From positions 215,340 to 279,339 of IMG/VR virus record IMGVR_UViG_3300044846_005229: DNA of 64,000 nucleotides; one strand, written 5' to 3'. Under the pieces are notes generated by a model. It did no database searches. It was not told where the DNA came from and saw nothing but the letters and a program-made list of their open reading frames with translations. The translations under genes were made by a program, and so were the position numbers. This document shows positions 1,251 through 60,449 of the stretch, one piece after another. How positions within the stretch are numbered: the stretch's first letter is position 1; the number at the start of each line of letters is the position of its first letter.

Positions 1251-2744
1251 TCAAGAGAGCAACCGACTCCTGATATTAGCCAGACTGTTTACATCTTCGC
1301 CATATACGCGACCGTCCAGGAAAACCGTTTTTAATTCCCCTAGTCCTTCCTGCTCATGGGTTTGCTGCTCATGGAGGACAAAGTCATCTCCTTCTTTTTC
1401 AACGCGGAGTAAACCCTTGGCCGATTTTTTCGTTCCAGAGTCAGTGATTGGATCCTTAAAAATTTCTACACCTTGACCATCAACTTGACCCCAAGTGGAT
1501 TTGAAAGCCATGCCAAAAGTATCGCGAGTGTGATATTGATAGGAATAAGATCCTACACCAAGAACAACGTTGCTGCTGGCCCACTTGTTACGGTTCATAT
1601 TTTCCAAGATAGAAAAAGCCCGTTGCAAGGTAATGGAATCACCGTAAATCAGACCAACCCTCGGATTAATTTCCCTGAAGCCACTTTCATTCACGGTGCC
1701 GCCAAACTCATCCCAAAGCAATTGCAGAGATCCCTTATGGGCAGGGCTGCCAGGTTCGGCATCAGGATTACCGCAAAGGATATGTTCGGGGTTACCGCTA
1801 TCACCCCTGAGTACAACCTTAGCAAGTCCCATAGCGTCCGGTTGACGGCTTAAGATAACATCCTTAAGTTGAACAGCAATTTTAGTCAAGACATTCCAGT
1901 AATCCCAAGTGTCACTAACAATACTGACGATACCACTGGGGTACCTGTCTTGAATAAGGCGCCGGTAAGTTTCCAACTCATTATCTTTACCGCCAATGCA
2001 CATTACACTGTGCTCAGTAGCAGGGACACCGCCCGCGATAAACTCAGAGCCAACATCATAGTAGTCTTCTAGGAAGTCGATCGAGGGGATATTGTCCGAA
2101 CCTGTAAACGAGAAAAGATGACCAATACCATGGGCAGCCCCATCATGAATTCCACCAACACCCCTCAACGAAAAGTCGTGCGCCTGGAAATTAACAAAGC
2201 TGGGGTCAGCTCCCGTCAATGCAGCATAACGATCTAGCAAACGACGAAACTCGTAAGCAACGGTAGCGATATTGACTGTTTTCCAAATTTCCGACGAAAG
2301 GGCAGTTTCCACGTAGTTAGTCAACCAGTAGAATTCGTGAATAGTATTCTGGATCGTCAAAAATGGTACTCTCAAATTGACTCGGCTTCCCTCAGGCAAA
2401 GCTTTAACCCTAAGGGGCATATAGCCGAGGTCATGTAAATCAGCCAGGTGATCTACTCCAACCGCCCCTGGGCCGAGGGCCGAATCCATACGCCTACGGT
2501 ACTTTTCAAGTACTTGATCCTTTGGTTTATTGAAAAAGGAGTCATTCCACAAGTCTTGAAGATACCATTTAAGAGTGCCTTGAATCCCTGCCACTACGAT
2601 TTTATGATCGAAATCCGGTAGCATCTTAGCCAGACGGTCAGATCTAGCGGTTTGATTGGTGTATACGATTTCGGTTTTGTCAGGGTATTGGTAGATATGC
2701 CCAGTCTTGTAAAAGTCGGTTGCGTGGGGGGCAAAAAGTTTCAT
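1251..2744 (-). CDS. nadV: nicotinamide phosphoribosyltransferase-family protein (NAMPT-like; probable Namat of NARP1)
   Basis: TDFYKTGH, HDFSLRG, PATEHSVM, SIVSDTWD, RGDSG, GLIYGDSIT, KDPITDSGTKKSAKG motifs; adjacent to Prs-like gene. Confidence 0.93.
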   Translation of the reverse strand: MKLFAPHATDFYKTGHIYQYPDKTEIVYTNQTARSDRLAKMLPDFDHKIVVAGIQGTLKWYLQDLWNDSFFNKPKDQVLEKYRRRMDSALGPGAVGVDHLADLHDLGYMPLRVKALPEGSRVNLRVPFLTIQNTIHEFYWLTNYVETALSSEIWKTVNIATVAYEFRRLLDRYAALTGADPSFVNFQAHDFSLRGVGGIHDGAAHGIGHLFSFTGSDNIPSIDFLEDYYDVGSEFIAGGVPATEHSVMCIGGKDNELETYRRLIQDRYPSGIVSIVSDTWDYWNVLTKIAVQLKDVILSRQPDAMGLAKVVLRGDSGNPEHILCGNPDAEPGSPAHKGSLQLLWDEFGGTVNESGFREINPRVGLIYGDSITLQRAFSILENMNRNKWASSNVVLGVGSYSYQYHTRDTFGMAFKSTWGQVDGQGVEIFKDPITDSGTKKSAKGLLRVEKEGDDFVLHEQQTHEQEGLGELKTVFLDGRVYGEDVNSLANIRSRLLS

Positions 2745-2809: not shown

Positions 2810-3730
2810 CTAGTTCACCCTGAGACAAGTCAAGTTGGCGGGTAGTTCCCGATAAAAGTCTCGATTCGGCAACATGTTCGCCACATAGAAGTGATCGATA
2901 AGGCCATCAAAAACCTCAAAACCCTTCGAGAAGATTCCATGGGTGATATACAAGTCGATGCGGGATGGCTCGTATTTTTTCAGAACCTTGGCAAGTTCAA
3001 TAAAGGTCCGACCACCATCGCAAATATCGTCAACAATAAGAAGGTTCTTCCCTTTGTAATCGCCGTCTTGGATCTCCGTTCGCAGGATTTCCCCATTTTC
3101 AGGGTTACGGACCTTAGTGGCATACTTGACTTCAGTAGACCCTCTAAATCTAGCAGCTACTTCCGCCCGTGGCACTGCGCCTTTATCAGGGGCAATGATT
3201 ACGGTGGTGGGGTCCCACTCCATGCCTGAAGGTATCAATTCAAACTTACTCAAAAGGGAATCAACCTGATCGTTAACAAAGTTGGTGAATTCCCCAAAGA
3301 TGCCCTCAGCTATAGGGCTATGAACATCCCACGTTGCCAAGAGGTCGCACTCGCCCAAATACGGCCTGAGGGAATTAGCAAACACCGACAGGGAGAAAGC
3401 TTCGCCTTCAGCACAAACTCTATCCTGGCGGCTATAGGGGAGATAGGGGATAAAAAGTTCCAACTTCCAAGGCTTGGGGAGCCCATCCCTCACTCTTTTA
3501 ATCGCATCCAAAATAAGCAAAAGTTTCACCCATTCTTCGCCTTTGCCGTCGATGTCAGCAGTGACGAAGATTTCGGAGTATTCAGACAGACTATCAAGGT
3601 TAACTCCGTCTAAGATTCTAACTTGATGCTCTCCAGCCGAGAAAGTGAAGGTTGAGTAATTGATCTCTGTAGGAGGTTTCCCCTCGATTAGATCCCTCGT
3701 TAGATTGGTTGCAGTTATGTTGATTGTCAT
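2810..3730 (-). CDS. prs: ribose-phosphate pyrophosphokinase-family protein (probable Adps of NARP1)
   Basis: FSAGE, PYLPYSRQDR, DVHS, APDKGA, IVDDICDGGRTF (PRPP loop), THGIFS. Confidence 0.92.
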   Translation of the reverse strand: MTINITATNLTRDLIEGKPPTEINYSTFTFSAGEHQVRILDGVNLDSLSEYSEIFVTADIDGKGEEWVKLLLILDAIKRVRDGLPKPWKLELFIPYLPYSRQDRVCAEGEAFSLSVFANSLRPYLGECDLLATWDVHSPIAEGIFGEFTNFVNDQVDSLLSKFELIPSGMEWDPTTVIIAPDKGAVPRAEVAARFRGSTEVKYATKVRNPENGEILRTEIQDGDYKGKNLLIVDDICDGGRTFIELAKVLKKYEPSRIDLYITHGIFSKGFEVFDGLIDHFYVANMLPNRDFYRELPANLTCLRVN

Positions 3731-42723: not shown

Positions 42724-42724
42724 A

Positions 42725-42796: not shown

Positions 42797-42824
42797 TTAT
42801 TGTACCGTGTGTTAATTACGGTAA

Positions 42825-42895: not shown

Positions 42896-42919
42896 ATGTC
42901 TACCTAATGTTACCCTTCC

Positions 42920-42973: not shown

Positions 42974-42977
42974 GTGT

Positions 42978-43118: not shown

Positions 43119-43143
43119 TTTATCAGGGTTTGTGTGGCCATCC

Positions 43144-43262
43144 GACTTGAGGGAACTTTAAGATTTGAGTTATGGCCAAAAAGTCATACAAGATGGTTGT
43201 TTTTTCTACCAAAAAGAAAGTTTTTAGATTGCTGAACCATCTTAGTTTTGCTATCGCAAAAC
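43144..43262 (-). ncRNA. CAGCAA hairpin RNA motif, copy 2
   Basis: AAGATGGTT-CAGCAAT...TTTCT-TTTTGGT-AGAAA...AACCATCTT. Confidence 0.65.
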
Positions 43263-43264
43263 AA

Positions 43265-43341
43265 CCGGAAATCGCAGAATCGAACTGCGGACCTCTCGTT
43301 TTTCAGACGAGCGCTCTTCACCAAGACTGAGCTAATTCCCG
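43265..43341 (-). tRNA. trnF: tRNA-Phe(GAA)
   Basis: CTCGT-CT-GAA-AA-ACGAG. Confidence 0.9.
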
Positions 43342-43402
43342 TTTTTTACCCGGGTTTGATCTCCCGGTAGTTATTACCCCCAGACTTTCACCTGAGGGCA
43401 AA

Positions 43403-43474
43403 TTGAACGCACGGGACTCGAACCCGCATCCTCCACCAACCCGGTGGCGCTCTACCACTTGGAGCTAACGTCCA
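43403..43474 (-). tRNA. tRNA-like gene with shrunken anticodon loop (isotype undetermined)
   Basis: intact acceptor, D and T arms; CCACC-GGGTT-GGTGG has only a 5-nt loop. Confidence 0.65.
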
Positions 43475-43609
43475 AATCCCTTTGAATAAACCTGCAAGTT
43501 ACTTTTAAGGGCCGGGTATTACAATTGCAGTTGCTTTCCCCTCGGGACTTTCACCCGTATATGCAACTCTGTTAATTCGTGGTTGCTAACGATTTCCCGT
43601 TTCCGGAAA

Positions 43610-43680
43610 CGGGGTATAGGGGACTCGAACCCCCCTTTGCGAGTAGACAGCCCGCAGCCTTCCCTGACGGCAAATACCCT
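43610..43680 (-). tRNA. trnD: tRNA-Asp(GTC)
   Basis: GCGGG-CT-GTC-TA-CTCGC, G73; A1.C72 mismatch. Confidence 0.8.
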
Positions 43681-43746
43681 ATTTGCCCCTGCCCTGGCTC
43701 ACTTGCTTGTTCCGAAGAACCGCACTAGCAAACCTGCTGGAGGCAA

Positions 43747-43819
43747 CACCCAATGAGGGAGTCGAACCCCCGTATTCTAATTCGTAGCCAGACGCTTTAA
43801 TCCACTAAGCTAATTGGGC
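43747..43819 (-). tRNA. trnR: tRNA-Arg(ACG)
   Basis: TCTGG-CT-ACG-AA-TTAGA. Confidence 0.9.
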
Positions 43820-43874
43820 AGTTTTCTGCCGAAAACTTTCAGAGTGTTCTCGTAAGTTTCTCGTTAGAGAAACA

Positions 43875-43955
43875 TGGCCCCCAAGGGACTTGAACCCTTA
43901 CAGCTTTCGCTGGGAGTTTTTAAGACTCCTGTGTCTACCCTTCCACCAGAAGGCC
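43875..43955 (-). tRNA. trnL: tRNA-Leu(TAA), second divergent copy
   Basis: GGAGT-CT-TAA-AA-ACTCC, long variable arm. Confidence 0.9.
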
Positions 43956-44014
43956 ATTTGGTGTTAAATTTTCAAGTTGCTGGTTGAGAGTTTTGACTCT
44001 GCCAACCTGTCACT

Positions 44015-44058
44015 ATTATAGCGTCTCTGCGGGCAGAGACAAGGGCGGTTAACCGAAC
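44015..44058 (-). promoter_or_regulatory. promoter with upstream CGGTTAACCG palindrome
   Basis: GTTCGGTTAACCGCCC-TTGTCT-16-TATAAT. Confidence 0.7.
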
Positions 44059-44128
44059 GTTTGCTGAGCAAACGACACCGGAGAGATGGCCCCCCGAGAT
44101 TTATCTTAAGTTTCCTCGTCAGAGAAAA

Positions 44129-44200
44129 AGCGGGTAGGGGTAGTCGAAACCCCGTCTACTGCTTGGAAGGCAGTCATATTGGCCGTTATACGATACCCGC
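44129..44200 (-). tRNA. trnG: tRNA-Gly(TCC)
   Basis: ACTGC-CT-TCC-AA-GCAGT, U73. Confidence 0.9.
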
Positions 44201-44240
44201 ATTTTGTATGTTGCTTCGGTAATGTTTACGTCAGCAAAAG

Positions 44241-44313
44241 GGTGATGAACGGGAATCGGACCCGCGCTAGTCTGGCTCACAACCAGATGCCTTACCACTT
44301 GGCTACCACCACC
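44241..44313 (-). tRNA. trnH: tRNA-His(GTG) with encoded G-1
   Basis: TCTGG-TT-GTG-AG-CCAGA; G-1/C73. Confidence 0.9.
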
Positions 44314-44411
44314 ATGGTGCCCTAGGTTTGTATCCAACGGTAATGAAACTTTAAGGTGATGGTCTCCCATTTCCACCCTAAGTCATATTACCCAGACTCA
44401 ACCGTAAGCAA

Positions 44412-44567
44412 TGCCCCAACCAGGGGTTCGAACCTGGAGGCAAAAGAATCTATTTTCAATAAGAAGGTTTGATTTCAAGGCCACACCTTATCAACGTAGG
44501 TTCAATACGCCTATCAGCATTTACTCGTAGATTTGAACCCTGATGCCTGTTCCAACTACTTTGGGAC
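44412..44567 (-). ncRNA. expanded tRNA-like RNA B
   Basis: GTCCCAA/TTGGGGC-A acceptor, CCAGG-TTCGAAC T-arm, interior closed by AGGCA/TGCCT with GGTTCAA/TTGAACC and further hairpins. Confidence 0.6.
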
Positions 44568-44604
44568 TTTTTTCGTGTTTTGAACATTCCTAACAAAGTT
44601 AGGC

Positions 44605-44671
44605 TAGATGATTGTTTTTCCAATTTCGAAGGAGTTGATCGCTGAATCATCTAAGTTTGCAACTGCAAAAC
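44605..44671 (-). ncRNA. CAGCAA hairpin RNA motif, copy 3 (divergent)
   Basis: AGATGATT-CAGCGAT...AATCATCT, compensatory change versus copies 1-2. Confidence 0.55.
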
Positions 44672-44680
44672 AATGGCAAA

Positions 44681-44761
44681 TGCCCACCGGGGGACTCGAA
44701 CCCCCACGCCTTTCGGCACATGGGCCTAAACCATGCGTGACTTCCATTCCACCAGGCAGGC
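44681..44761 (-). tRNA. trnL: tRNA-Leu(TAG)
   Basis: CATGG-TT-TAG-GC-CCATG, long variable arm. Confidence 0.9.
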
Positions 44762-44792
44762 TTTTTTCTAGGGGTTTTTCAAAGAAAAACAT

Positions 44793-44948
44793 TGAAGTGG
44801 AGAGGCTTGAACTCTCAATGTTAAGATTGCGTCTGGCTGCTACTTAACAGGTGGTTTCAACCATGAGCCAGGAAGTTGCTATTAGCATTTACAACCCCAT
44901 CCGTATCGGCTGATTCCACACCCCCGTATACCAGTTCCGGCACACTTC
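44793..44948 (-). ncRNA. expanded tRNA-like RNA C
   Basis: GAAGTG/CACTTC acceptor, type-II D-arm CCG-GAACTGGTATA-CGG, T-arm GAGAG-TTCAAGC-CTCTC, extended anticodon and variable arms. Confidence 0.7.
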
Positions 44949-44967
44949 TTCTTTCCTTAGAAAGAAA

Positions 44968-45048
44968 CTGGAGCGGAAGGACTCGAACCTTCATTGTCTT
45001 TCGACACTCGTTAACAGCGAGTTGCATTTCCAATTATGCTACACCCCA
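44968..45048 (-). tRNA. trnN: tRNA-Asn(GTT) with long variable arm
   Basis: ACTCG-CT-GTT-AA-CGAGT then GTC-GAAA-GAC; G73. Confidence 0.85.
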
Positions 45049-45209
45049 TTACACCCTGCGTTACGGCAGGGGACAGTAGGAAACACTCTGGGGTCGCATT
45101 GCGTCCCGGTGTGAGTACGAATCGTTACTTAAACCGGTTATTACTGACCCTTAGCTGCAAACCGGAAACCTGTGCTAAAGGACTTTTTCCTTTCCCGTTA
45201 GGGAAAGAA

Positions 45210-45283
45210 TGGGAGCGGTCGGGATCGAACCGACGACCTATCGGTTATCAACCGAGTGCTCTAGACCGCTGAGCTACGCTCCC
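45210..45283 (-). tRNA. trnI: tRNA-Ile(GAT)
   Basis: TCGG-TT-GAT-AA-CCGA. Confidence 0.9.
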
Positions 45284-45489
45284 TTGGTGTTAAATTGTCT
45301 AGTTTCTGTCAATGGCGTAACCAGTGGCGTTACTACCAGCGACACCCTTAGTATAGGGTCTTGCCCCGGTAAAGTAAAGGACGGTTTGCCGCCCCCACCT
45401 TACGGACTTTTTCGCGTTTTTCGCTTAGCGAAAGTTGCCTTGCGATTAAACCTTACCAGGGTTAGCTGGTGGGTTAATCTTAGAGCAAA

Positions 45490-45616
45490 TTGACTACCGA
45501 GGACTTGCACCTCGACCCCCTCTGTCCAAAACTACTCGCAGGTACGGAACTTGGCCTTCGTTCTATCTTACTGCTTTCGCCCAAAGGGACATGCTGACTT
45601 CTAACACTCGTAGTCA
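45490..45616 (-). ncRNA. expanded tRNA-like RNA D
   Basis: TGACTAC/GTAGTCA acceptor, D-like arm, TGTCC/GGACA anticodon stem enclosing about 60 nt, T-arm CGAGG-TGCAAGT-CCTCG. Confidence 0.7.
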
Positions 45617-45778
45617 AAGTCCATTTTACGTCAGGGCGGACACACCCCGTTTGCCTTTGGAAAACCAAAGATTTAACCTACCTAGATTTACCCTCTTACA
45701 CGATAACTCGTTTTGATGCAATCTCCCGATCTGCAGAGGCAAAGTAGGCTAGCCCCGTGGATTAATCCCATAGGGCCA

Positions 45779-45852
45779 TACTCTAGAAGGGATTCGAACC
45801 CTCGATTTCCTGCTTGAAAGGCAGGCGACTTAGACCGCTTGTCCACTAGAGC
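45779..45852 (-). tRNA. trnE: tRNA-Glu(TTC)
   Basis: CCTGC-CT-TTC-AA-GCAGG. Confidence 0.92.
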
Positions 45853-46159: not shown

Positions 46160-46933
46160 CTAAGCAACAAAATCCCCTAGCTGAATCCTGCCCTCCGGCA
46201 CCCATTCTTTGACAATGGCCCTAATTATGGGCTTATTCGGTCTATACTGGGGGGGAATATCCGACATGTCCAAACTCTCGGGTCCAACCAAAACCCGTTG
46301 ACGCTTAATGTAGGTCCCATGGGTGAATGCCCTAGGGAGTTCTTCCCATGGTTTCCCTATTTGTTTCAGCAAGGTTTTCATTTCTTCGCAAGTTACCCCT
46401 TGAAGGTCCTTATGTGAAAATAAACTCTGGGCATACATTGACACTGAGTTTTTCGTAGCGTCATTGAGCCTCCATAGGAAGTTCTTATAGACGTATTCCA
46501 AATTAGGGACATTCCATACCCTGCAGTCAAATACGGGGTACTGGCCTACCTTTTCAGGGAGATATTCAGGTAAGTTTCCTGTGAAAAATGCCCCCGCTGT
46601 CGAGGCCAGTATTGATGTCAGCTTCTGGTATTTGCCCCTAAATAGAAATTCCCTATTGGAGTAATTCCGCTTGTCAAGATGCCAATACAAAGTTATCTCA
46701 TCGGATTGGCAATACCCTAGTAAAGCCTCACTTTCGGTAACAAGGTGCCTTGTGGTAGCAACCATTAGGTTAACGAATCGCTCATCAAACGGCTTTTGGA
46801 GGTTATGGGTAAACGAACTAAAGGTCCTCCCATCGATGCGGCACATTAAAGGGCGGAAGGGATTTGCAGTCCTGCCTGCCTCTTTTTGCTCTTGTTCTTT
46901 TAGGGTGTCGCCCAGGGTGTCAGTGTGTGGCAT
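46160..46933 (-). CDS. Thg1-like protein (tRNA-His guanylyltransferase / 3'-5' polymerase family)
   Basis: RIDGRTFSSFT..LQKPFD, YCQSDEITL, FRGKYQKLTS, FDCRV, WRLNDA.KNSV. Confidence 0.92.
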   Translation of the reverse strand: MPHTDTLGDTLKEQEQKEAGRTANPFRPLMCRIDGRTFSSFTHNLQKPFDERFVNLMVATTRHLVTESEALLGYCQSDEITLYWHLDKRNYSNREFLFRGKYQKLTSILASTAGAFFTGNLPEYLPEKVGQYPVFDCRVWNVPNLEYVYKNFLWRLNDATKNSVSMYAQSLFSHKDLQGVTCEEMKTLLKQIGKPWEELPRAFTHGTYIKRQRVLVGPESLDMSDIPPQYRPNKPIIRAIVKEWVPEGRIQLGDFVA

Positions 46934-47793: not shown

Positions 47794-48921
47794 TTAAAAT
47801 CCCCCCTTCTCAGTCTCCCTGAGGGCCACTCCGACCGGGAAAATCGGGACACCACTTGCACTCAGTTCTTGATACCGGACTGTAAGGTACTTTGTTGTTG
47901 ACAATATGTCCTCACGATTTTCGTAAAGAGACCTGCGGTATTCCATATCGCCTTCTGGCACGACAGTAAAGGTTTCAGTCTCAGTGGCTTTACATACAAA
48001 GATCGAAGCACTTTTGAACCGGCCACCCCCTTCGATAATGTCAAGGACTTCAAACTCACCGTCCACGAAATCCTTCACCTTTTGCAACTGGTTGTTCCGG
48101 TGTCCGATATCATACCCGCCAAGGTCGAACCTGACCATCGAACCCTCGTACCCGGAGTCAACGAATTGACTGTGGTGAAAAATAACGTCAGATGGGGACT
48201 CCACCTCGGCAGTAGGGGTTAGTATAATGTGTGATTCTCCCAAGGGAACCAGACTCTTCAAAATTTCAAACCGTTCGGAGAAAGGTCTCGAAGGATCAAC
48301 AATGTCGTAGACCCAGTATACAAGCGTGGGGGACAACTCGGGACGAAACTTCTTGATCGCAGTCATTGTCTTTTGTAACAGAGGGTTTCCCGGCAGAATG
48401 AGTTCCCCGTCCAGGATCACCCCTGGTGGCAATTTTCTGATTTCCTCTTTAATATGTGCGATACACTCCGGAATAATCAACTTGCCACCGCGAGACCACC
48501 CCCCACTATTGTCGAGTAGCATCCGTTGTCCGTTCAGTTTAGGTTGCACGAATGCGGGCCAGGTTACCTTGTGGCCACGGTCCGAAAACTTATGGGCTAG
48601 CATTGGTAAGGGCAAAACCTCGGGCTCCTGCCCGATTTCAGCATATCCTTTATCAATTTGCTTTTTAAAGTCGCGCTCAATTTCTAGGTGGGCTTGTTGC
48701 TCCGCTGTGGTTGCGTTGGCCCGTCCGACATTTTTGGGATACACACAGTAAGGATCACTAAATTGCAAGGCTGAGCTTGAGCCATCATTATTTGTTTGCC
48801 AATAGGACGATTGTGTAAACCACCTATCCACGCTACTAAAAAGGACGTGCCCTTGCCAGAACTTGGCTTTACCGGTGCGGGTTGTTGACTGGAGGACTGG
48901 GGTGCTGTGTACGATTTTCAT
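47794..48921 (-). CDS. ATP-dependent DNA ligase with WGR-like N-terminal domain
   Basis: PMLA, QPKLNGQR (motif I), LDGEL, YDIV, EGSMVR, LQKVK, TVRYQELS..GVPIFP. Confidence 0.92.
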   Translation of the reverse strand: MKIVHSTPVLQSTTRTGKAKFWQGHVLFSSVDRWFTQSSYWQTNNDGSSSALQFSDPYCVYPKNVGRANATTAEQQAHLEIERDFKKQIDKGYAEIGQEPEVLPLPMLAHKFSDRGHKVTWPAFVQPKLNGQRMLLDNSGGWSRGGKLIIPECIAHIKEEIRKLPPGVILDGELILPGNPLLQKTMTAIKKFRPELSPTLVYWVYDIVDPSRPFSERFEILKSLVPLGESHIILTPTAEVESPSDVIFHHSQFVDSGYEGSMVRFDLGGYDIGHRNNQLQKVKDFVDGEFEVLDIIEGGGRFKSASIFVCKATETETFTVVPEGDMEYRRSLYENREDILSTTKYLTVRYQELSASGVPIFPVGVALRETEKGGF

Positions 48922-49215: not shown

Positions 49216-49600
49216 CTAATACTCTTGTTTGTCGCCAAGGGTCACATTTGTGCCGTTCAGAGCAATGAAGGGTCTACCGCACACTCCCCAGTCTGCTATC
49301 CAGAGTGGCGTGGTGGGGGTCATCTTATACTCTCCGCCTTTGTACCCAACGAAAGTCCTTCCTACCAGTTTTTTACACATTGCAAGAAGGGTCTTGGATG
49401 GGACTTCCCCAGGCTCTTGCTCAAAGGCTAAATCGGAATAATACCCACGGTAAGAGTGGGGGGGAAGTCAGGTTGGCAACTGGGTGGTCATCTGTGTACT
49501 CCAAGTAGGAAATTAAGTTGCCAAGTGTAAGGTGAGTTTCTGAGCGAAGCGCTGCTGCATCACGTAGAATTCCTTCTGCAGGGCTATCGAATCGGTTCAT
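49216..49600 (-). pseudogene. conserved phage hypothetical gene frameshifted in a G7 run (49458-49464)
   Basis: removing one base gives a continuous ORF: ...LTLGNLI...SPHSYRGYYSDLAFE...FVGYKGGEYKM...TPLWIA. Confidence 0.7.
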
Positions 49601-50054
49601 TTTGTACGGTAGAATTTTGCTAGATTAGGGGGGGCTTAAAACTATACAAACTCGTGAAGGAAATAATCAATGGAAATCCCACAGCAGGTAGAATTGCTCC
49701 TCAGTCATTGCTTTCAAGCATTTTAATGGCGTTCACGAAGGTTTCTTCACCGATGTCACCGCTGTACAGGCGATCAATATGCCTCATTACTCGTGCAGTC
49801 TCTCGAATGATGAGCAGTTTGCTACAGAGGATCGAAAGAACTTCACGCGATAGGTGCGCTCCGCCGTTTTCATCGTACTCGTTGAAGTCGATTGCGTTTT
49901 CTAGCTCGTCGGCAAATTGCTCGACTTTGAAGTAAATGTAACCGTTTTCGTTAAAGTGTCCACCTGACATGTTGTTGTTTTGATAGTTTTAACTGACTTT
50001 AGAGTTTTCCGACAGATTCGGATTTTTCTGTGGGGGGGTTCTACCCCCTTATCA

Positions 50055-50348
50055 TCAAACTTCCGTAAATCCTTTTTTCTTTTGCTTTTTAACGTCCCGC
50101 TCAATTTCCAAATATGCTTGCTGCTCAGCAGAGATTTCAGTGGATTTACCTACGTTTTTGGCCTCTACGGGGAAAGCTTCGCTCCATTGTGTAACCGACA
50201 TAGTGCCGTCAACTTTCTGTCTCCAGAAAGACACTTGGGTAAACCACCCTCCGGCGTCATTGGAAATGATGTGACCTTGCCAAAACTTGGGATCACCTGA
50301 ACGGGCGATTATTGCTTGGAGGACTGGTGTGCTGTGTACGATTTTCAT
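50055..50348 (-). CDS. stand-alone paralog of the ligase N-terminal domain
   Basis: MKIVHSTPVLQ...KFWQGH...WFTQ...KNVG...AEQQA.LEIERD.KKQ..KG shared with 47794-48921. Confidence 0.8.
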   Translation of the reverse strand: MKIVHSTPVLQAIIARSGDPKFWQGHIISNDAGGWFTQVSFWRQKVDGTMSVTQWSEAFPVEAKNVGKSTEISAEQQAYLEIERDVKKQKKKGFTEV

Positions 50349-50473
50349 GGTTGGGGTGGTAATGGGGATAATGGGAAGGATAAGGGGAGATAACGGGAAG
50401 GACAGGATGCAGTGCAAGGACTAGATGGCACAATACCATCTCCATACCCAGTGTAGCACACTTTGCGGCCCTG

Positions 50474-51391
50474 TCAAGACAAGGCAAGCATCTTCTCAAG
50501 GGGCTTCAAAGCCTTCAATCTTAACCCCCCTTCAAGTTTAATCTCGGGTGTCAAATCCCGCAGACAATTGCGAACTTTTTCCAGAGTGCTTAACTTCATC
50601 CATGGGCAGTCATTACAACTACAGCCATCTCGGCCAGGGACATCTAGGAATACCTTGTTGGGTGCAACCTGACTCATCTTGTGGATAATTCCTGGTTCTG
50701 TCAGGACGATGAATGTTTCTGCCGGGCTATCTTTCACCCTTTGCAGTAAAGCACTGGTAGAGCCCACAAAATCAGCAAGGCGCAATAACGCTTCTTCGCA
50801 TTCCGGGTGGGCAATAACTTCGCAGCCAGGGTTGGCTGTCCAGAGATCCATCAACGCTTCTTCGCTGAAAGCTTCGTGTACCTGGCAGCTGCCATCCCAT
50901 AAAGTCAAATTTCGACCTGTTTGCTCAGCTACCCATCGCCCCAAATTTCTATCCGGTGCGAACAAAATGGGCCTGTCAGCGGGAATCTGGTTTACCAGGC
51001 GCACCGCATTACTGCTAGTGCAGATAAGATCGCTCTGGGCCTTAATCGCTGCTGAACAGTTTATGTAACTGACTACATAGTGGTCGGGGTGCTCTGCACG
51101 AAACTTGGAAAAGTCACCCGGTAAACAAGCATCAGCCAAGCTACAACCTGCATTGATATCAGGAAGTAAGACGGTCTTCGATGGGTTAACAATCTTGGCA
51201 GTTTCAGCCATGAAGTGAACACCGCAAAACACAATCGTGTCTGTATTTGTCCCAGCAGCTTGGCGGGCAAGCTCAAGGGAATCCCCTACAAAATCCGCAA
51301 TTTCCTGAATGGCTGGTTCCTGGTAGTAGTGGGCCAGGATTACTGCGTTACGTTGCTTTCTCAGCTTAAGAATCTCTTCGACCGGGTTCAT
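50474..51391 (-). CDS. nadA: quinolinate synthase
   Basis: [63 protein letters not shown]. Confidence 0.96.
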
Positions 51392-53238
51392 TGCTTTTTG
51401 GGGTTATGTGTCAGGTTGTTCAACTGAACGGTCACTAAACGGGGTAGAACTTGTCATGGTAATTAGAACCGATTTCAGTTCGTTCCCCTGGTTTATTAAT
51501 TCTAGACCCCCATCAGATTCCCACCGAGGTGCAATCCGATAGTATACATAAGGTTCCGTTAGAGCTTCCAAGCTATATTCTTTCCTCCCTTTAAGGTAGT
51601 CTAAGATAATCTCCTCTATTTGATTAGAGGTTAGGCAGATTGTTTTCATGTAACGCGGGTTTGGCGTTAGCGGAAATTGGGGTGGGTACATTTATTGGGG
51701 CTCTGTGGCTATGTGCTAGATTGTCAAACTGAACGAGAATTAAATGGGGGTGGAGCCTAACAACACGTTCCGCTCCGCCGTACGCACTAAATCAATCCGT
51801 ACATTCCTCCATGGTAATCTCAAATCCGGAAAATTCCCGCTGCGAAGGGAAGCGATCCTCGTAGTATCCGATTGGGCTCTCATACAGAGCTTGAACACTG
51901 GTAACCCTGTGGTCCGGGTATTGTGTTTCTAGAGAAGAAACCATGGCTTCTTTCACAGCTTCGAGATCAAGTTTGACTTTGGCGAAGTGCCTGAGTTTAG
52001 TCATCGGTCCCAGTAAGAAGAATTACGAGTTTCTGAAGGTTTCAGAACGATCTCAACCCCTTCGAAAGTAGTGCCGCTAACTTCGTGCCTCATGTCGGTT
52101 TGTGTGGAAGCGTTGAATGAGATTTGATCCGCAACAAAGTTAGGGAAAGATTTCCCAACTTCTTGCCTAATAAGTGCCTCAATTTGAGTTTTTGTAAGAG
52201 ATACCCGTACCGGGGTGTTATTAAAAAGGTTGCTCATTGATGTGTGTGTTCAGGGGGGGGGGGGGGATTAAGTGCAGGGTCGATCGTAACGTACAAGCTG
52301 CTCATCGTTGGTAACGTAACTCTCACCTAAATAATGAAAGCATCTGTTACGGATGAGAAACCACTCAGTTGTGTTGTCGTCGTCACTCTTAGCTAGTAAC
52401 AGGTCATGATCAAAACCTACATAGTAGTTGTGGTTGTAGTGGCTAATTTCCTCAATTCTTTTGAATTGCTCCATTTGCAATCCGTTTGGGTACTTTTCTA
52501 CGGGGTTCATAAATGAAATGTCGGTGATCAAACTAAGCCTAACGTCTTTACAGGGGGGAAGGCAAGCCGGAGAACTGGGCCAAAAGATTCGGGTAACCGT
52601 CCTACTTGTCAGGGCAATCACTCAGTCTCCCCATAGCCAATCAGCGGCGGTAAGGGGAAGCCCAATAAACCCGCCAAACGCTGATGCAAATAGCAAGCGT
52701 CGAAATAATGCCGATAAGACCTAGGAAAGTGGTAGCGTTGCCGGTGAAATCTAGAGAGTCGGGAGCCATGGTTGATTGGTTGGTTGGTTGATTGTCAACT
52801 AAAGCAGGGTCAAAATCACATACGACTCAGGACAAACTCAACTTCTTCTAAAGTTGCTTTTTCAGGATCTACGAATTCCGCATAGATGTAATCTACAGGG
52901 AGACCATAAAAATCAGCCATTTTCTCACAAAGTACATACTTTAGGAGTTCTGGTTCAATAGAAGAGTCAATTAGCATGGGTCTCAAGGCGATTTTGAACA
53001 TGGGCTTGATCGCAGGAACGGCGAAGAACCCGGTACCAACCCCGTGAACCATAGTACCATACAGAAAAAGGGGAGTGTCAACCCCCCGTGATTTACCGGT
53101 TCCTGCGACCCGCGCTCAAATCAGTTATCATCACAACGGTTTCTCGAAGCTTCCCTGAGGTTGATTTCTGTCTCTAGGTCAATTAGTTGTTTCAGATACA
53201 GTCCATACTCCGACGAAATGAGATCCGCCAGGGAAGAA

Positions 53239-53421
53239 TCATCCAACTTTTCTAAATATGATCCTCCCAGCAAAGAGTTCGATTCCAAGTGTATCTCCTT
53301 CTTTCCAATTAACCGCTTGTAAAAGCTCATCAGGGAAGTCAAGAATGAGGTTGCCATTTTCATCGGATGATAGTTTAGTAGTTAGCTGAGTGTTTTCAGT
53401 GGTTTCTGGGTTTAGGTTCAT
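53239..53421 (-). CDS. AbrB/MazE-like small DNA-binding protein
   Basis: DENGNLILDFPDELLQAVNWKEGDTL. Confidence 0.65.
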   Translation of the reverse strand: MNLNPETTENTQLTTKLSSDENGNLILDFPDELLQAVNWKEGDTLGIELFAGRIIFRKVG

Positions 53422-53906
53422 TTTGCTGCGGGGTTTACGATTTAATGTTAAACAGCAAGGTCACAATCTCATGACAAGCACCCATTTTCTATAATTTGTA
53501 GGTTTAACTTAGGGTCAGCCATTAGTAGATCATTCCTCATGTTTTGGATTCGTAACCTGTTTTTAGAAGTTGCCTGAAGTTTGGCGTGGCTTTGAACGAC
53601 TGTTTTACCATCCATCTCCACTAATTCCAATGTACTTTCTGGGAAATTTCTGGGTGGGATCATTGGGTTCTCGTATTCTTTTCGGTTGGCACTATGGTAA
53701 CGCCACTATCGTCTTCACCTTCTTCATGAAGGGATCTTGTAGCAGAGGCTACGGAAAGGAACTCCCTCGCCATGGTACTCCAACTTAAACCATCCCAATA
53801 GCAACCATCGGCTCTAACAACTAGAAACATCGGGTGACCTCCACTCTGTCACCAGTATAGCAGGACCGCCAGAAAAGTCAATGGGTTAGCCGAATGCTGT
53901 CAGCAA

Positions 53907-54341
53907 TCAGTGTCCTAAGGCTTGTTGAAGCAAGCTTTGGTTGTGCAAAATTTCGCTAGACATTGATTGCAAGTAGTCTGCTAAGCCTACCATTCTCGGG
54001 TCCCCTTTGAAAGAACTTGTGTATTCAAAGAATAATGAGACCATACCATTGACTGCCATTGTGTAGTCTAAAGTTAGGGCCAGCAACGACAAGCAGTCAT
54101 AGGTTTGCATGGAAATAGCGGGACCAGAAAATTCGGGGAAATCTGGATTGTAACCACAACCACGCAACCTTTCGATGAGGCCGTCCATTAGGCCGTTAAG
54201 GGAATCATATACCCGGTCAAACAGCAAATGACATTCATAGAAATTACTACCACGTACATTCCAATGAGCCATGTGCAACACAATGGTTGCATCATTCAAG
54301 AGTTTGACAGTTTTTTTAGCATAGACAGTGAGTTCTTCCAT
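53907..54341 (-). CDS. dps: Dps/ferritin-like protein
   Basis: HMAHWNVRGSNFYECHLLFD.VY......D.LIERLR. Confidence 0.85.
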   Translation of the reverse strand: MEELTVYAKKTVKLLNDATIVLHMAHWNVRGSNFYECHLLFDRVYDSLNGLMDGLIERLRGCGYNPDFPEFSGPAISMQTYDCLSLLALTLDYTMAVNGMVSLFFEYTSSFKGDPRMVGLADYLQSMSSEILHNQSLLQQALGH

Positions 54342-54633
54342 TGGGTGCTTCAGGGTGCTTAGGGTGCTTTTAGATACATTTCAATAGCAACTTGATCATC
54401 TGATGATTCACATAATGCCAGGAATTCTTTGTCTGGATTATAATTAGCTAGACTTGTAATCAAGCTGTTTTCAAACTCAAAATAATCCCCACCTTTATCG
54501 AAATTTTTTAAAAATTGTAGCACATCAGCCCAGGACAAAAATTTACAGTCAGACGACGTATAGAAGTGAGCGCCCCTTTGGCCCAAGTGTGCCTCAAAAC
54601 TTTCCATTAGGTAGGGATTATCCATAGCAACCA

Positions 54634-57432: not shown

Positions 57433-58098
57433 TCATTCCTCGATTCCATTAACCCAACCCGCGAGTTGCTGCCCGTTGGCGTCGCTTGTGGCCACTTGGC
57501 TAACCACAAAGTCAATAGGACCGGCATCCCCGGCGGCTTCGATCTCGCTGTACAACTGGGCTAACCTGGCGTCGTTGTGGAACGATGCTTGTAGCAGCGC
57601 TTCGTGTCTTGCGATTAGATTTGTGAACTGCGGCAAACGGTTATTTGCTGCCACCTGCTTCTCCGCGTATTGTAACTTCTCGGTGTAACCGTTCTCCTGG
57701 GGCCATAACATCGCGTTGTAGCGGTCAGCATAGCCTTTGGCCAGTGTTTTCAGCTCAGCTATTGTGCGACGCTTAATGTTTTCGGAACGTACATAGGTTC
57801 CTTTGGGATGACCATCGGGAGCCCCGCCAGGTTTCAAAACCAGGTTCCACCCTGAAGTCGTATCGTCAACATGGAATAGTTCTGGGTCAAATGGGACGGG
57901 TGTGAATGGCACTAGCTCGTAATAGTCAGCAGGTTGGTCATGGGGGCGGCCATATAGAAATGGCCATCTACTACCAGCGGGGTTACGAACTTGACCGTCA
58001 GTAACAGCCACAAAAAGCTTAACACTTTGGCCCTCTTGAGGGCCATCTTCGTAATACTCAATGCCGGTGATGGGATTAGTGGTGATAGCTGAGGTCAT
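57433..58098 (-). CDS. hypothetical (likely tail fibre-associated) protein
   Basis: 221 aa ORF in structural operon. Confidence 0.7.
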   Translation of the reverse strand: MTSAITTNPITGIEYYEDGPQEGQSVKLFVAVTDGQVRNPAGSRWPFLYGRPHDQPADYYELVPFTPVPFDPELFHVDDTTSGWNLVLKPGGAPDGHPKGTYVRSENIKRRTIAELKTLAKGYADRYNAMLWPQENGYTEKLQYAEKQVAANNRLPQFTNLIARHEALLQASFHNDARLAQLYSEIEAAGDAGPIDFVVSQVATSDANGQQLAGWVNGIEE

Positions 58099-58100
58099 GA

Positions 58101-60449
58101 TTAGGAATAACGAACAATAACTGTAAAAATGTGACCAGAAGAGCCAGTGCCGACTGCGTTAAGGTTGAGCCCAAGAGTGTCCCCGGTTGTAAGGGTCAAG
58201 GGAGCGATTAAAGTAGATGTGACATCAGTGAAGTAACCAGCTACGGTACTTACTGCCGCCAGAGAAGCGTCAGCACTTAAGAGGTTTGACCTTGTGCCGC
58301 TGCGACGGGCGTAGAGCATTGCCTGACTTGTACTGCTGCCAGTGGAAACTGGAGAGCATTCCCAGTAAGCTGCTATAACCGTACACGCACGGAGAACTGT
58401 TGTTTCAACGTAGTTTGCCCCTGGGGTTGCAGTTTCACCCCTATTGGAAACAACAAGCTTAATAATGTCTGAGGGGACGAAAGTTCCACTCTGGATGGAT
58501 AGTCCCCCGGATAAAGTTGCTCCAGCAGCAACGCCGCCATTGTTGTAAATAACTTGGCCCGTGGTACCAGCGACTGGGCCTGTTGCCCCGGAAACCCCGA
58601 TGACGCCTGTTGCCCCAGTAGCACCGATTGGGCCTGACACCCCAGTTATACCCTGGGGCCCAGTTGCTCCGGTGGTTCCGATCCCAGTGGCACCGATGAT
58701 ACCAGTTGCCCCTGTCACCCCGATAGGGCCAGTTGCTCCCGTAGATCCCTGGGCACCGTTCACTAGTGCTAGGAATAATGAATGGTTATTACTGAAGTTG
58801 GTTGTCCCTGACCCGGAAGAATTCAGCAGGGATACAGGATATTGCCAGTAACTATTTGGGGTGCTAGGGTTTATGTTGGACGGTGTGCCATTAATCACCC
58901 AAGTTTGGTAATTTGAACTATCGTTTCTATCTTGTATAGTAATTTTTTCAGTCTGAGTTAAACTCGATAAGAAAATATCGATGTCTGTGTTGTCATCCGT
59001 TAAATGACTAATGTTTAATGCGGTTGAGTTGATTTGTGTGGCATTGTTCCAGATTAAGTTGCCCTGGCCGGGATCTCCCGTAGTGGCCGTAGTTTTGGCG
59101 CTGTACAGGAATAGACTAGAAGAATACCCTTGGGGACCAGTGGCCCCTGTGCTACCCGATAAACCAGTTGCTCCCGTGGTTCCAACAGGCCCAGTGGCCC
59201 CCGTGGTTCCAACCCCGGTAGCTCCAGTTGCCCCTGAAACTCCAACAACGCCAGTTGCCCCTGTACTTCCTATTGCCCCTGCTACACCTGTAGCACCAGT
59301 TGCCCCGAAACCTGTTGCCCCGGTTGCTCCTGTTGCCCCGGTCGCACCCGTTGTGCCAACAACGCCAGTTGCCCCGGTTGCCCCGGAAACCCCAATTCCT
59401 GCAGGTCCAGTCGCCCCCGTTGTACCAACAACGCCAGTTGCCCCGGTTGCCCCGAAACCTGATGCTCCCGTTGCCCCGGTCGCCCCATCTGCACCGGTAG
59501 CCCCGGTTGCTCCTGACGCTCCAAAACCTGACGCCCCAGTTGCTCCTATCGCACCGGTAGCTCCGGAAACTCCAATTCCGGTAGGTCCAGTTGCCCCCGT
59601 TGTGCCAACAACGCCAGTTGCTCCTGACGCTCCAGTTGCTCCTGACGCCCCGAAACCTGATGCTCCGGTAGCACCGGTTGCTCCAGAAACCCCGGTAGCT
59701 CCGGTAGCACCTGATGCCCCAAAACCAGTCGCACCATCCGCGCCGGTAGCTCCGGTAGCACCTGATGCCCCGGTTGCCCCAGACGCCCCGAAACCGGAAG
59801 CCCCGGTTGCTCCAGTCGCACCATCCGCACCGGTCGCACCGGTCGCTCCCGACGCTCCAAAACCAGTCGCACCAGTTATACCAATCGGCCCAGTTGCCCC
59901 AGTTGCTCCTGATGCCCCCGACGCTCCGAAACCGGAAGCTCCAGTTGCCCCGGTCTCCCCGGCAGCCCCGGTCTCCCCAATTGGGCCCGAAGCCCCAGTC
60001 GGACCGGCTACTCCAGTAGGTCCAGTATCCCCACGGAAGCTAGACACCCATTGGCCACCTGCCAGACCAACATACCAAACCGAAAGATACGACGACAAGG
60101 TATCAAACCATAGGGCGCCGTTTACAGGGTTCGGTGGGGCGGATGCCGATACGGAAGCACACGGGGTGCATCCACTAGAGGACGAAGTAACTTCCTTCCA
60201 CTGCCCAAGGGTTCCAGGTTCTAGGACCCAAATATATAAAATTTCGCTTACAGTATTAAACCAAAAAGACCCTTGGAGAATTGGTGGCGCAGGTTGAGAA
60301 GCAGAGACGTAGATCGGGACTGTAGTCGGTTCAGGCTCAGATAGGTTAATCCATTGCCTCCCGTTCCAACGATAGTCAGATCCCTGCCATGTGAAAGTTT
60401 CACCTGGTGTGGGATTTGGTGGAAAATTTGTTGGAAAATTATTGGTCAT
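58101..60449 (-). CDS. collagen-like (Gly-X-Y) tail fibre/virion protein
   Basis: long G-A-T/G-A-S triplet arrays with periodic 2-residue breaks (GF, GI, GV); N-terminal [11 protein letters not shown]...YRWNG.QW domain. Confidence 0.88.

What the first reader, a model, noticed from the sequence alone, without database searches (positions are those of the whole stretch)
50474..51391. De novo NAD precursor enzyme NadA in addition to NAD+ salvage
Seen: intact nadA with all three cluster cysteines, among phage hypothetical genes, without nadB or nadC in the window. Established: NadA is the oxygen-sensitive Fe-S step of quinolinate synthesis. Inference: a second, de novo route to refill NAD(P), extending known NARP strategies. 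The nearby Dps could protect Fe-S chemistry in an oxygenic host.
Basis: partly seen in the sequence, partly recalled or inferred. Interest (0 to 1): 0.6.

Follow-up and report, generated by a model that had tools for sequence, protein, structure and literature searches.

The report
Cyanophage carries quinolinate synthase NadA
A complete 279-kb lake phage, most likely infecting picocyanobacteria, carries an intact and long-conserved NadA (the iron-sulfur enzyme of de novo NAD synthesis) but no other gene of that pathway, so it probably reinforces one host step rather than supplying a route of its own.

Summary
ORF 50474-51391 (-) is a full-length quinolinate synthase. It passes the Pfam and two NCBIfam equivalog cut-offs. 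All three cluster cysteines and eleven active-site residues are present. The AlphaFold model fits solved NadA at TM 0.93.

It is not host contamination:
- The genome is complete (279,339 bp, 124-bp terminal repeat).
- nadA has phage-like GC (49%, against 63-68% in Cyanobium nadA).
- The gene recurs in the same neighbourhood in at least 10 independent assemblies.
- dN/dS is 0.03-0.16.
- The phage copies form one clade (99/96), sister to picocyanobacterial NadA.

The genome has no nadB, nadC, nadD or nadE, so this is one step and not a route. In the likely host family, 39 of 41 genomes have nadB and only 1 of 41 has any nicotinate/nicotinamide phosphoribosyltransferase.

The window also holds a true NARP1 pair (Namat and an Adps-like gene) and a Dps-like protein with an intact ferroxidase site.

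Best reading: an auxiliary metabolic gene that replaces the host's oxygen-labile bottleneck enzyme. A counter-defence role remains speculative.

I found no report of phage nadA. PHROGs has no such family. All 41 NadA-bearing IMG/VR records lack nadC.

The parts
50474..51391 (-). nadA: quinolinate synthase, 305 aa, intact. Cluster ligands C83, C169 and C262.
   Evidence: Pfam and NCBIfam above cut-offs. PDB alignment. Residue conservation. Model TM 0.93 to 5f35. dN/dS 0.03-0.16.
51404..51691 (-). ORFan of 95 aa ending 12 nt before the nadA start. Probably co-transcribed. Not conserved in relatives.
53907..54341 (-). Dps-like mini-ferritin, 144 aa, with ferroxidase residues H26, H38, D42, D53 and E57.
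   Evidence: Pfam Ferritin 33.4 bits. PDB Dps matches and alignment to Listeria Dps 1qgh. PHROG 3636. Conserved upstream of nadA in L003, L004, L010, L095 and L097.
50055..50417 (-). ORF directly downstream of nadA. Residues 24-120 are a duplicated N-terminal fragment of the phage DNA ligase (54% identical).
47794..48921 (-). Intact ATP-dependent DNA ligase, a conserved downstream landmark of the nadA region in relatives.
1251..2744 (-). Namat (NARP1 nicotinamide ADP-ribose transferase) homologue, 497 aa.
   Evidence: 456 bits to solved Namat 9W5X/9W5W against about 200 bits to Nampt. NCBIfam NF006629 516 bits. More than 2000 phage records hold a homologue.
2810..3730 (-). PRPS-like gene adjacent to Namat: the Adps candidate of NARP1, 306 aa.
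   Evidence: Pfam Pribosyltran with the N-terminal and synthetase-associated domains. TIGR01251 114 bits against cut-off 113. Only 63 bits to housekeeping PRPP synthetases.

Best explanation
nadA is an auxiliary metabolic gene of a lineage of large freshwater phages of picocyanobacteria (Cyanobium / Synechococcus subcluster 5.2 type). An ancestor of the lineage took it once from the picocyanobacterial stem, and the gene has been kept under strong purifying selection as an ordinary quinolinate synthase. During infection the phage enzyme would receive its [4Fe-4S] cluster from the host SUF machinery. It would then condense iminoaspartate (from host NadB) with dihydroxyacetone phosphate to quinolinate, which host NadC, NadD and NadE convert to NAD. 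The phage supplies only this step because it is the weak link. The cluster has three ligands and a free catalytic iron site, and it is inactivated by oxygen and reactive oxygen species. That inactivation is chronic in an oxygenic host and likely worse once host protein renewal stops after infection. These hosts also have no nicotinamide or nicotinate phosphoribosyltransferase, so all pyridine-ring supply passes through NadA. Shown: identity, integrity, fold, phage residence, single old origin, purifying selection, absence of the other pathway genes from the phage, and presence of nadB and nadC with near-absence of salvage phosphoribosyltransferases in the host family. Inferred: that NadA limits flux in infected cells, that the enzyme is made and matured, and that more NAD(P) benefits the phage. 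The Dps-like protein may buffer iron or peroxide for this and other phage Fe-S enzymes; that link is weak.
For: Enzyme identity and integrity. Phage residence: the record is complete with an exact 124-bp terminal repeat. nadA has GC 49% and GC3 50%, against 46.5% for the genome and 63-68% (GC3 75-92%) for Cyanobium/Synechococcus nadA. The same stretch occurs in 20 lake-water DNA runs, and an independent run bridges the nadA start. Eight IMG/VR contigs and three further metagenome contigs carry nadA at 72-95% identity among phage genes and in the same gene order. Selection: dN/dS is 0.03-0.16, with synonymous sites saturated between subclades. Only five conservative clade-specific substitutions were found. 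Origin: the phage clade has support 99/96, the picocyanobacterial clade 98/98, and the two are sisters (89/52) inside Cyanobacteriota. Only one step is present: for this genome. The 98%-complete relative G003 also lacks nadC while holding nadA, a Namat-like gene and a Dps-like gene. Host dependence on the de novo route: nadC in 5 of 5 close hosts, nadB in 39 of 41 and a NAPRTase-family gene in 1 of 41 genomes of the host family. Host identity: terminase 54% identical to Synechococcus phage S-CBWM1. Generality: all 41 NadA-bearing IMG/VR records lack nadC, including 8 that are at least 90% complete. Their NadAs fall into at least four deep virus-only clades. Precedent: over-expressing nadA alone raised NADH content in E. 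coli, P = 0.03 (PMC10084859). Oxygen lability of NadA is established knowledge, cited from memory (Gardner and Fridovich 1991). The three-cysteine [4Fe-4S] cluster and SUF-linked maturation are described in PMC9981529.
Against: There is no direct evidence of expression. Contigs from three lake metatranscriptome libraries lie on nadA and the Dps gene at 90-97% identity, but such libraries can carry DNA and the contigs come from relatives. Whether NadA limits NAD synthesis in picocyanobacteria is unknown. The E. coli precedent is small, and its NAD+ and total-pool changes were not significant. The phage brings no Fe-S carrier, SufE or NAD kinase, so a new apo-NadA competes for the same stressed host machinery. 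De novo synthesis is slow and needs four host enzymes to stay active. The closest isolated relative by terminase, S-CBWM1, gave no nadA match in the GenBank phage search, so the gene is not needed by every phage of these hosts.
Confidence: 0.6

Rival explanations
1. Counter-defence: NadA works with NARP1 to refill NAD+ after host NADase defence systems (TIR, SIR2, SEFIR and the like) deplete it. It would supply new pyridine rings when nicotinamide or ADP-ribose is lost or further degraded, acting in effect as a fourth, de novo NAD-restoring strategy.
For: A bona fide Namat plus an Adps-like pair sits in the same genome, and also in the 98%-complete relative G003 and in fragment G004. Defences are known that degrade NAD+ to products NARP1 cannot reuse, such as the aRES system (abstract of 10.64898/2026.01.28.702374). 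The hosts lack their own nicotinamide salvage.
Against: nadA lies 47 kb from the NARP1 pair, so they are not one operon. One enzyme of a five-step pathway cannot match NADase turnover unless all the host enzymes keep pace. None of the NARP papers or the two broad surveys of viral NAD systems mentions NadA or de novo synthesis. No defence or anti-defence gene was recognised beside nadA. This reading does not exclude the main one; it differs in the selective pressure proposed.
Confidence: 0.2
2. Changed function: the protein keeps the NadA fold but serves another purpose in the infected cell. Examples would be an Fe-S or iron sink, a partner that sequesters host NadB, or a catalyst with a different substrate.
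For: It stands alone, without pathway partners, in every viral genome examined. About half of the phage copies have an extra cysteine at position 190, where cyanobacteria have alanine or serine.
Against: All substrate-binding, catalytic and cluster residues are invariant across 57 phage sequences. Only five conservative clade-specific changes separate the phage clade from the host clade. dN/dS is as low as or lower than among the host genes. The model superposes on substrate-bound NadA at 1.4 A.
Confidence: 0.07
3. Artefact or passenger: a host fragment mis-assembled into a viral contig, or a recently captured gene with no function that is on its way to decay.
For: In the GenBank phage collection the only nadA matches (at most 41% identity) lie in nine records that are mostly unannotated metagenome-derived or draft contigs, some possibly contaminated. 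nadA is rare in viruses overall.
Against: Composition matches the phage and not the host. Gene order is conserved in independent assemblies from many samples. The genome is closed by a terminal repeat. The phage clade is deep and monophyletic. Purifying selection is strong, with saturated synonymous divergence.
Confidence: 0.03

Closest known systems
NadA of freshwater picocyanobacteria (Cyanobium, Synechococcus subcluster 5.2; family Prochlorococcaceae)
   Same: 67-71% identical over the full length. Same ligand cysteines, the same CxCxxC motif at 257-262 and the same catalytic residues. Sister clade in the tree.
   Different: Encoded on a phage. GC3 is 50% against 75-92% in the host genes. 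Called length is about 305 aa against 304-350 aa in host proteins, whose start codons are uncertain. No nadB or nadC sits in the same genome.
Phage NAD+ reconstitution pathways NARP1 (Adps + Namat), NARP2 (Nampt + Nmnat) and NARP3 (PnuC + NadR)
   Same: Phage-encoded enzymes that raise the NAD+ supply of the infected cell. NARP1 is present in this same genome.
   Different: All three rebuild NAD+ from breakdown products or imported precursors, and each is complete in itself. NadA makes the pyridine ring anew, is a single step and needs four host enzymes. No counter-defence activity has been shown or tested for it.
Solved quinolinate synthases of Thermotoga maritima (4p3x, 5f35) and Pyrococcus horikoshii (4zk6, 5ktn)
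   Same: Same three-domain fold (TM 0.92-0.94, rmsd 1.4-1.7 A), 37-40% identity and the same active-site residues.
   Different: A six-residue insertion precedes the third ligand cysteine; it is the only region with lower model confidence, residues about 251-260. This insertion is shared with cyanobacterial NadA.
Cyanophage auxiliary metabolic genes that replace short-lived host proteins (for example psbA/D1); comparison from memory
   Same: A host-derived gene for a damage-prone bottleneck protein, kept under purifying selection in phage genomes and forming its own phage clade.
   Different: A cofactor-biosynthesis enzyme rather than a photosystem subunit. This genome has no psbA. Turnover of host NadA during infection has never been measured.
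Plant plastid SufE3, a SufE-NadA fusion (mentioned in PMC9981529)
   Same: In an oxygenic compartment, NadA is coupled to dedicated Fe-S supply or protection. This parallels the NadA plus Dps-like pairing proposed here.
   Different: No SufE domain or gene occurs in the phage. The Dps link is only neighbourhood, and only in part of the clade.

Membership tests
Quinolinate synthase NadA (PF02445; TIGR00550 / NF006878) | Full-length match above the curated family cut-offs | tested here: met
   PF02445 391 bits (cut-off 27), covering 1-295 of 295. NF006878 437 bits (cut-off 294). TIGR00550 369 bits (cut-off 263).
Quinolinate synthase NadA (PF02445; TIGR00550 / NF006878) | Three cysteine ligands of the [4Fe-4S] cluster, one from each domain | tested here: met
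   C83, C169 and C262 align with T. maritima C81, C168 and C254. They are invariant in 83 sequences.
Quinolinate synthase NadA (PF02445; TIGR00550 / NF006878) | Active-site residues (T. maritima H19, Y21, D35, S36, Y107, N109, S124, H171, H193, E195, S209, T210) | tested here: met
   All are present and invariant. The T. maritima numbering is checked against the PDB titles naming the Y21F and S124A variants. The residue list itself is from memory.
Quinolinate synthase NadA (PF02445; TIGR00550 / NF006878) | Three-domain pseudo-threefold fold | tested here: met
   Model pLDDT 95.8. TM 0.93 and rmsd 1.4 A to 5f35.
Quinolinate synthase NadA (PF02445; TIGR00550 / NF006878) | Binds a [4Fe-4S] cluster and makes quinolinate from iminoaspartate and DHAP | not testable with these tools
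   Needs anaerobic purification with an enzyme assay, or complementation of a nadA mutant.
Complete de novo NAD pathway (NadB-NadA-NadC-NadD-NadE) encoded by the phage | nadB and nadC (and nadD, nadE) present in the same genome | tested here: not met
   No match above noise for PF01729, PF00890, PF02540 or PF01467 in the complete genome, with positive controls giving hits.
NARP1 (for the genes at 1251-3730) | A Namat homologue closer to characterised Namat than to Nampt | tested here: met
   456 bits to 9W5X/9W5W, the SPbetaL1 Namat as confirmed in PMC12774641, against about 200 bits to Nampt.
NARP1 (for the genes at 1251-3730) | An adjacent PRPS-like Adps | tested here: met
   A PRPS-like ORF lies 65 bp upstream on the same strand. 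ADP-ribose specificity could not be tested.
NARP1 (for the genes at 1251-3730) | Aromatic residues of the selectivity clamp in Namat | not tested
   No residue-level alignment to SPbetaL1 Namat was made.
NARP1/2/3 (for nadA itself) | The gene is a described component of the pathway | tested here: not met
   The pathway descriptions list Adps and Namat, Nampt and Nmnat, and PnuC and NadR only. The founding NARP paper contains no occurrence of 'nadA', 'quinolin' or 'de novo'.
Viral auxiliary metabolic gene | A host-derived metabolic gene inside a bona fide viral genome, flanked by viral genes, conserved among related viruses and under purifying selection | tested here: met
Dps (for 53907-54341) | Ferritin-like four-helix protein with the inter-subunit ferroxidase residues | tested here: met
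   Pfam Ferritin above cut-off. H26, H38, D42, D53 and E57 align with the Listeria Dps site (Listeria numbering from memory). Below the NCBIfam Dps cut-off. Dodecamer formation and iron oxidation are not testable here.

The most novel reading that the evidence does not exclude
'nadA alone' is a recurrent viral strategy. Several unrelated lineages of large phages have each kept a NadA of different ancestry and never nadC. This would mark the oxygen-labile Fe-S step as the general weak point of NAD supply in infected cells. In picocyanophages NadA would combine with NARP1 and a Dps-like protein into a three-part kit: new pyridine rings, recycling of NAD breakdown products, and iron or peroxide buffering. 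That would make it a fourth, de novo-based way for phages to hold up NAD+, possibly also against NAD-depleting immunity.
Probability: 0.3. Interest if true: 0.75.

Novelty: new variant of a known kind. Interest (0 to 1): 0.58.

Why it matters
Phage manipulation of NAD+ is an active field, but every described phage pathway (NARP1, 2 and 3) salvages or rebuilds NAD+. This finding would be the first documented case of a phage investing in de novo synthesis, and in only its iron-sulfur, oxygen-sensitive step. It gives a testable prediction about what limits NAD supply in infected oxygenic cells. It points to hosts (picocyanobacteria) that largely lack salvage phosphoribosyltransferases, where the pressure should be strongest. 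It also adds a cofactor-biosynthesis gene to the list of cyanophage auxiliary genes. The gene is easy to test by complementing a nadA mutant and by enzyme assay, and a cultured relative of the phage lineage (S-CBWM1, with its host) exists as an entry point.

Tried and rejected
- **Host contamination or chimera.** Rejected on composition, conserved gene order, independent assemblies and runs, and the terminal repeat.
- **A hidden rest of the pathway elsewhere in the genome.** Not found. nadB, nadC, nadD and nadE are absent by family search with positive controls. NadX-type aspartate dehydrogenase was not searched.
- **Fe-S helper genes or NAD kinase that would make a larger module.** None found in this genome or five relatives.
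- **Function for the small ORFs around nadA.** No Pfam or PHROG family.
- **RNA elements near nadA.** Only tRNAs in 44-58 kb.
- **Near-identical GenBank phage.** None by megablast.
- **Prior reports.** No paper holds both 'quinolinate synthase' and 'cyanophage'. Other searches returned only author names or the NADAR domain. Subscription journals and supplementary gene tables are not covered, so a listing of nadA in some catalogue of viral metabolic genes cannot be excluded.
- **Expression.** Only contigs of RNA libraries could be laid. They touch nadA and the Dps gene but do not prove transcription.
- **psbA as a marker of a cyanophage.** Absent. Host assignment rests on NadA ancestry and the terminase instead.
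- **Limits of the protein word search.** It sees only proteins of 0.55-1.75 times the query length, so NadA fusions such as SufE-NadA would have been missed. No claim here rests on their absence.
- **Tools and rules.** The large representative search and complex prediction were not used.

Full report
**1. What is at the coordinates**

The ORF at 50474-51391 on the minus strand starts with ATG and encodes 305 residues. It matches Pfam NadA over the whole model (E 3e-117). It passes two NCBIfam equivalog models for quinolinate synthase: 437 bits against a cut-off of 294, and 369 against 263.

Aligned with Thermotoga maritima NadA (4p3x, E 6e-64), the three ligands of the [4Fe-4S] cluster fall on C83, C169 and C262. 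The known active-site positions fall on H21, Y23, D37, S38, Y109, N111, S126, H172, H195, E197, S211 and T212. An AlphaFold2 model built on a 26-sequence alignment has pLDDT 95.8.

**2. The replicon**

The window is the last 64 kb of a 279,339-bp IMG/VR virus record that CheckV rates 100% complete. The first and last 124 bases of the record are identical.

All genes of the window run on the minus strand. They include:
- 17 tRNA genes;
- an HNH endonuclease, a UvrD-type helicase, an RlaP-like protein, an EF-Ts homologue and a radical SAM protein;
- an ATP-dependent ligase and a Thg1-like protein;
- collagen-repeat and lectin-fold proteins, and a virion structural protein.

The large terminase, outside the window, is 54% identical to that of Synechococcus phage S-CBWM1. 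The next best matches are the S-TIM5-like cyanophages at 34%. No GenBank phage is close at the DNA level.

**3. Is nadA really part of the phage?**

Five independent lines say yes.

- *Composition.* nadA has 49% GC and 50% GC3, like the genome (46.5%). nadA of the nearest cells has 63-68% GC and 75-92% GC3.
- *Independent assemblies.* Eight IMG/VR contigs of 25-277 kb carry nadA at 72-95% protein identity. Three further metagenome contigs at 72-75% identity show it among phage lysozyme, tail-fibre, ligase, Thg1, RlaP and ORFan genes. Gene order around nadA is shared: Dps-like gene, small ORFs, nadA, ligase, Thg1.
- *Sequencing runs.* The 5-kb stretch around nadA occurs in 20 lake-water DNA runs from different studies. 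In one run that is not the source, a contig bridges the nadA start into the upstream gene without a difference.
- *Selection.* Pairwise dN/dS within the phage clade is 0.03-0.16. Between subclades synonymous sites are saturated while the proteins stay at least 72% identical.
- *Phylogeny.* In a careful maximum-likelihood tree of 68 sequences the phage-type NadAs form one clade (ultrafast bootstrap 99, SH-aLRT 96). Picocyanobacterial NadAs form another (98/98). The two are sisters (89/52) within Cyanobacteriota. Other cyanobacteria are only 53-63% identical.

The gene therefore entered this phage lineage once, long ago, from the picocyanobacterial stem. One caveat applies. Phage origin was checked by gene context for eleven members of the clade. 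For the other metagenomic proteins it is inferred from clade membership.

**4. Has the enzyme changed?**

No sign of it. All 15 ligand and catalytic positions, and the CxCxxC motif at 257-262, are invariant in 57 phage-clade and 26 picocyanobacterial sequences. Only five conservative substitutions are fixed between the two clades.

**5. What the phage does not have**

Six-frame family searches of the complete genome found no nadC (only an 11.5-bit noise match), no nadB-type flavoprotein, no NAD synthetase and no nicotinate-mononucleotide adenylyltransferase fold. The same searches gave hits in 12-14 of 14 control genomes.

The 277-kb relative, 98% complete, likewise has NadA, a Namat-like gene and a Dps-like gene but no nadC. 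There is no A-type Fe-S carrier, SufE or NAD kinase in this genome or in five relatives.

The phage thus contributes one step of five and needs the host for the substrate, the cluster and everything downstream.

**6. The host side**

The nearest cellular NadAs are from freshwater Cyanobium and Synechococcus (67-71%), followed by Prochlorococcus (about 61%). Five of five such genomes have nadC.

In a sample of 41 genomes of that family, 39 have nadB above the curated cut-off. Only one has any member of the NAPRTase family, which includes both nicotinate and nicotinamide phosphoribosyltransferases. In the genomes searched, pyridine-ring supply therefore runs through NadB, NadA and NadC alone, and nicotinamide released from NAD cannot be reclaimed by that route.

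**7. The other NAD genes in the window**

At 1251-2744 lies a 497-aa protein that scores 456 bits against the crystal structures 9W5X and 9W5W. The paper that deposited them identifies these as Namat of phage SPbetaL1. Against human and rodent Nampt it scores about 200 bits.

Directly upstream (2810-3730) is a divergent PRPS-like protein, as expected for Adps. With no Nmnat fold in the genome, this is a NARP1-type pair and not NARP2. It lies 47 kb from nadA.

**8. The Dps-like gene**

ORF 53907-54341 passes the Pfam Ferritin cut-off. It finds only Dps proteins in the PDB, and it has the five ferroxidase-centre residues in register with Listeria Dps.

It sits 2.5 kb upstream of nadA here and in the same relative position in L003, L004, L010, L095 and L097, at 48-99% identity. 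It is not within 10 kb in L005-L009 and lies about 19 kb away in the 277-kb relative. A good terminator-like hairpin (53087-53070) lies between it and nadA. The link is suggestive at most.

**9. How it most likely works**

Established knowledge, from memory except where a call is cited:
- NadA uses a [4Fe-4S] cluster held by three cysteines, with one free iron site that binds substrate (PMC9981529).
- The cluster is destroyed by oxygen and reactive oxygen species, which makes NadA the oxygen-sensitive site of de novo NAD synthesis.

An oxygenic host exposes NadA to this damage continuously. A lytic phage that shuts down host gene expression would stop its renewal. Supplying fresh NadA keeps quinolinate, and hence NAD(P), flowing for what is probably a long infection cycle. 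This is the usual logic of cyanophage auxiliary genes that replace short-lived host proteins.

A small study reports that over-expressing nadA alone raised NADH content in E. coli (P = 0.03), although the NAD+ and total-pool changes were not significant. This fits NadA being limiting but is weak support.

I give this reading a probability of about 0.6. The steps from 'intact conserved enzyme' to 'limits flux' and 'benefits the phage' are inferences.

**10. The rival readings**

- *Counter-defence, together with NARP1.* This is possible and does not exclude the main reading, but nothing here speaks for it specifically (about 0.2).
- *Changed function.* Unlikely, given the invariance of the active site (about 0.07).
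- *Artefact or passenger.* Refuted by the tests in section 3 (about 0.03).

**11. Expression**

Contigs from three lake metatranscriptome libraries lie on parts of nadA (50700-51394) and on the Dps gene (53309-54500) at 90-97% identity. They come from related strains. Such libraries can contain DNA, so this is only a hint.

**12. How unusual is it?**

- PHROGs version 4 (38,880 phage protein families) has no family that matches NadA.
- Among 50,697 GenBank phage records only nine have any NadA match, all at 41% identity or less, mostly unannotated metagenome-derived or draft contigs.
- A profile-guided scan of 2.9 million IMG/VR contigs found 44 loci. This is a lower bound, because it needed one of two exact motifs.
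- In a tree with cellular sequences these loci need at least six changes between virus and cell. They include three further deep virus-only groups: L127-L134 on 120-446 kb records, L137-L150, and L154-L158.
- All 41 NadA-bearing viral records lack nadC, including eight that are at least 90% complete. For fragments this says little, because nadA and nadC are not linked in cells either.
- Neighbours of NadA in two of those other groups again include a Thg1-like gene and an ATP-dependent ligase. This hints at a conserved genomic neighbourhood across distant large phages. I did not resolve this.
- The NARP papers and two broad surveys of NAD systems in viruses and jumbo phages do not mention quinolinate synthase or de novo synthesis.

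**13. Verdict**

The gene is an ordinary NadA in an unusual place. It is a new variant among phage strategies for NAD supply: a single de novo step rather than a salvage pathway. It is conserved in a lineage of large freshwater picocyanophages and possibly recurs in other large phages.

Noticed in passing
window 50055-50417 and 47794-48921: The ORF directly downstream of nadA carries a 97-residue copy (54% identical) of the N-terminus of the intact ATP-dependent ligase 1.1 kb further on. In relatives the same piece aligns to the start of an uninterrupted ligase. The stretch between nadA and the ligase differs in length and content between strains, and an independent DNA run shows alternative joints there (50348>49500; a loose end at 50317). 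It looks like a recombination scar or variable cassette site.
   Followed up: partly
L127-L134, L137-L150, L154-L158 (IMG/VR): Three further virus-only NadA clades (53-55%, 39-43% and 30-32% identical to this one), some on 268-446 kb records, and none with nadC. NadA neighbours include a Thg1-like gene (L128) and an ATP-dependent ligase (L138), as in this window. Two of the largest records are flagged as provirus, so their viral status is not certain.
   Followed up: partly
window 26625-45852, 16195-16803, 46160-46933, 13761-14885: A translation and RNA-repair set: 17 tRNA genes, an EF-Ts homologue (202 aa), a Thg1-like tRNA-His guanylyltransferase and an RlaP-like nucleotidyltransferase. Relative L095 adds a poly(A) polymerase/CCA-adding family gene.
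   Followed up: no
window 28628-29860 and 29945-30709: A full-length glutathionylspermidine-synthase-like preATP-grasp protein (E 1e-128) sits next to a DUF1190 protein. This is an unusual pair for a phage. It might relate to thiol or redox chemistry.
   Followed up: no
window 20001-24000 and 58001-60000: Two GC-rich islands (54-57% against about 46%). The second is the collagen-repeat gene 58101-60449. The first holds ORFs without any Pfam family (20923-23269) and could be a more recent import from a GC-rich host.
   Followed up: no
window 17631-18596: A radical SAM protein with only weak family matches. It is a second phage enzyme that needs a [4Fe-4S] cluster, which is relevant to why a Dps-like gene might be kept.
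   Followed up: no
window 58101-60449, 60885-61634, 62044-63999, 3918-4856: Two collagen-triple-helix repeat proteins and a Laminin_G_3 lectin-fold protein, likely fibres or receptor-binding proteins. An SLH-domain protein is also present.
   Followed up: no
window 49500-54500 in runs X21, X22, X24: Lake metatranscriptome libraries contain contigs 90-97% identical to parts of nadA, the small ORFs and the Dps gene. This suggests related phages were active in those samples. It is not proof of transcription.
   Followed up: partly
window 27964-28518: A nucleoside 2-deoxyribosyltransferase-like protein (184 aa). Members of this fold also act on NAD- or nucleotide-derived substrates in conflict systems. 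Not examined.
   Followed up: no
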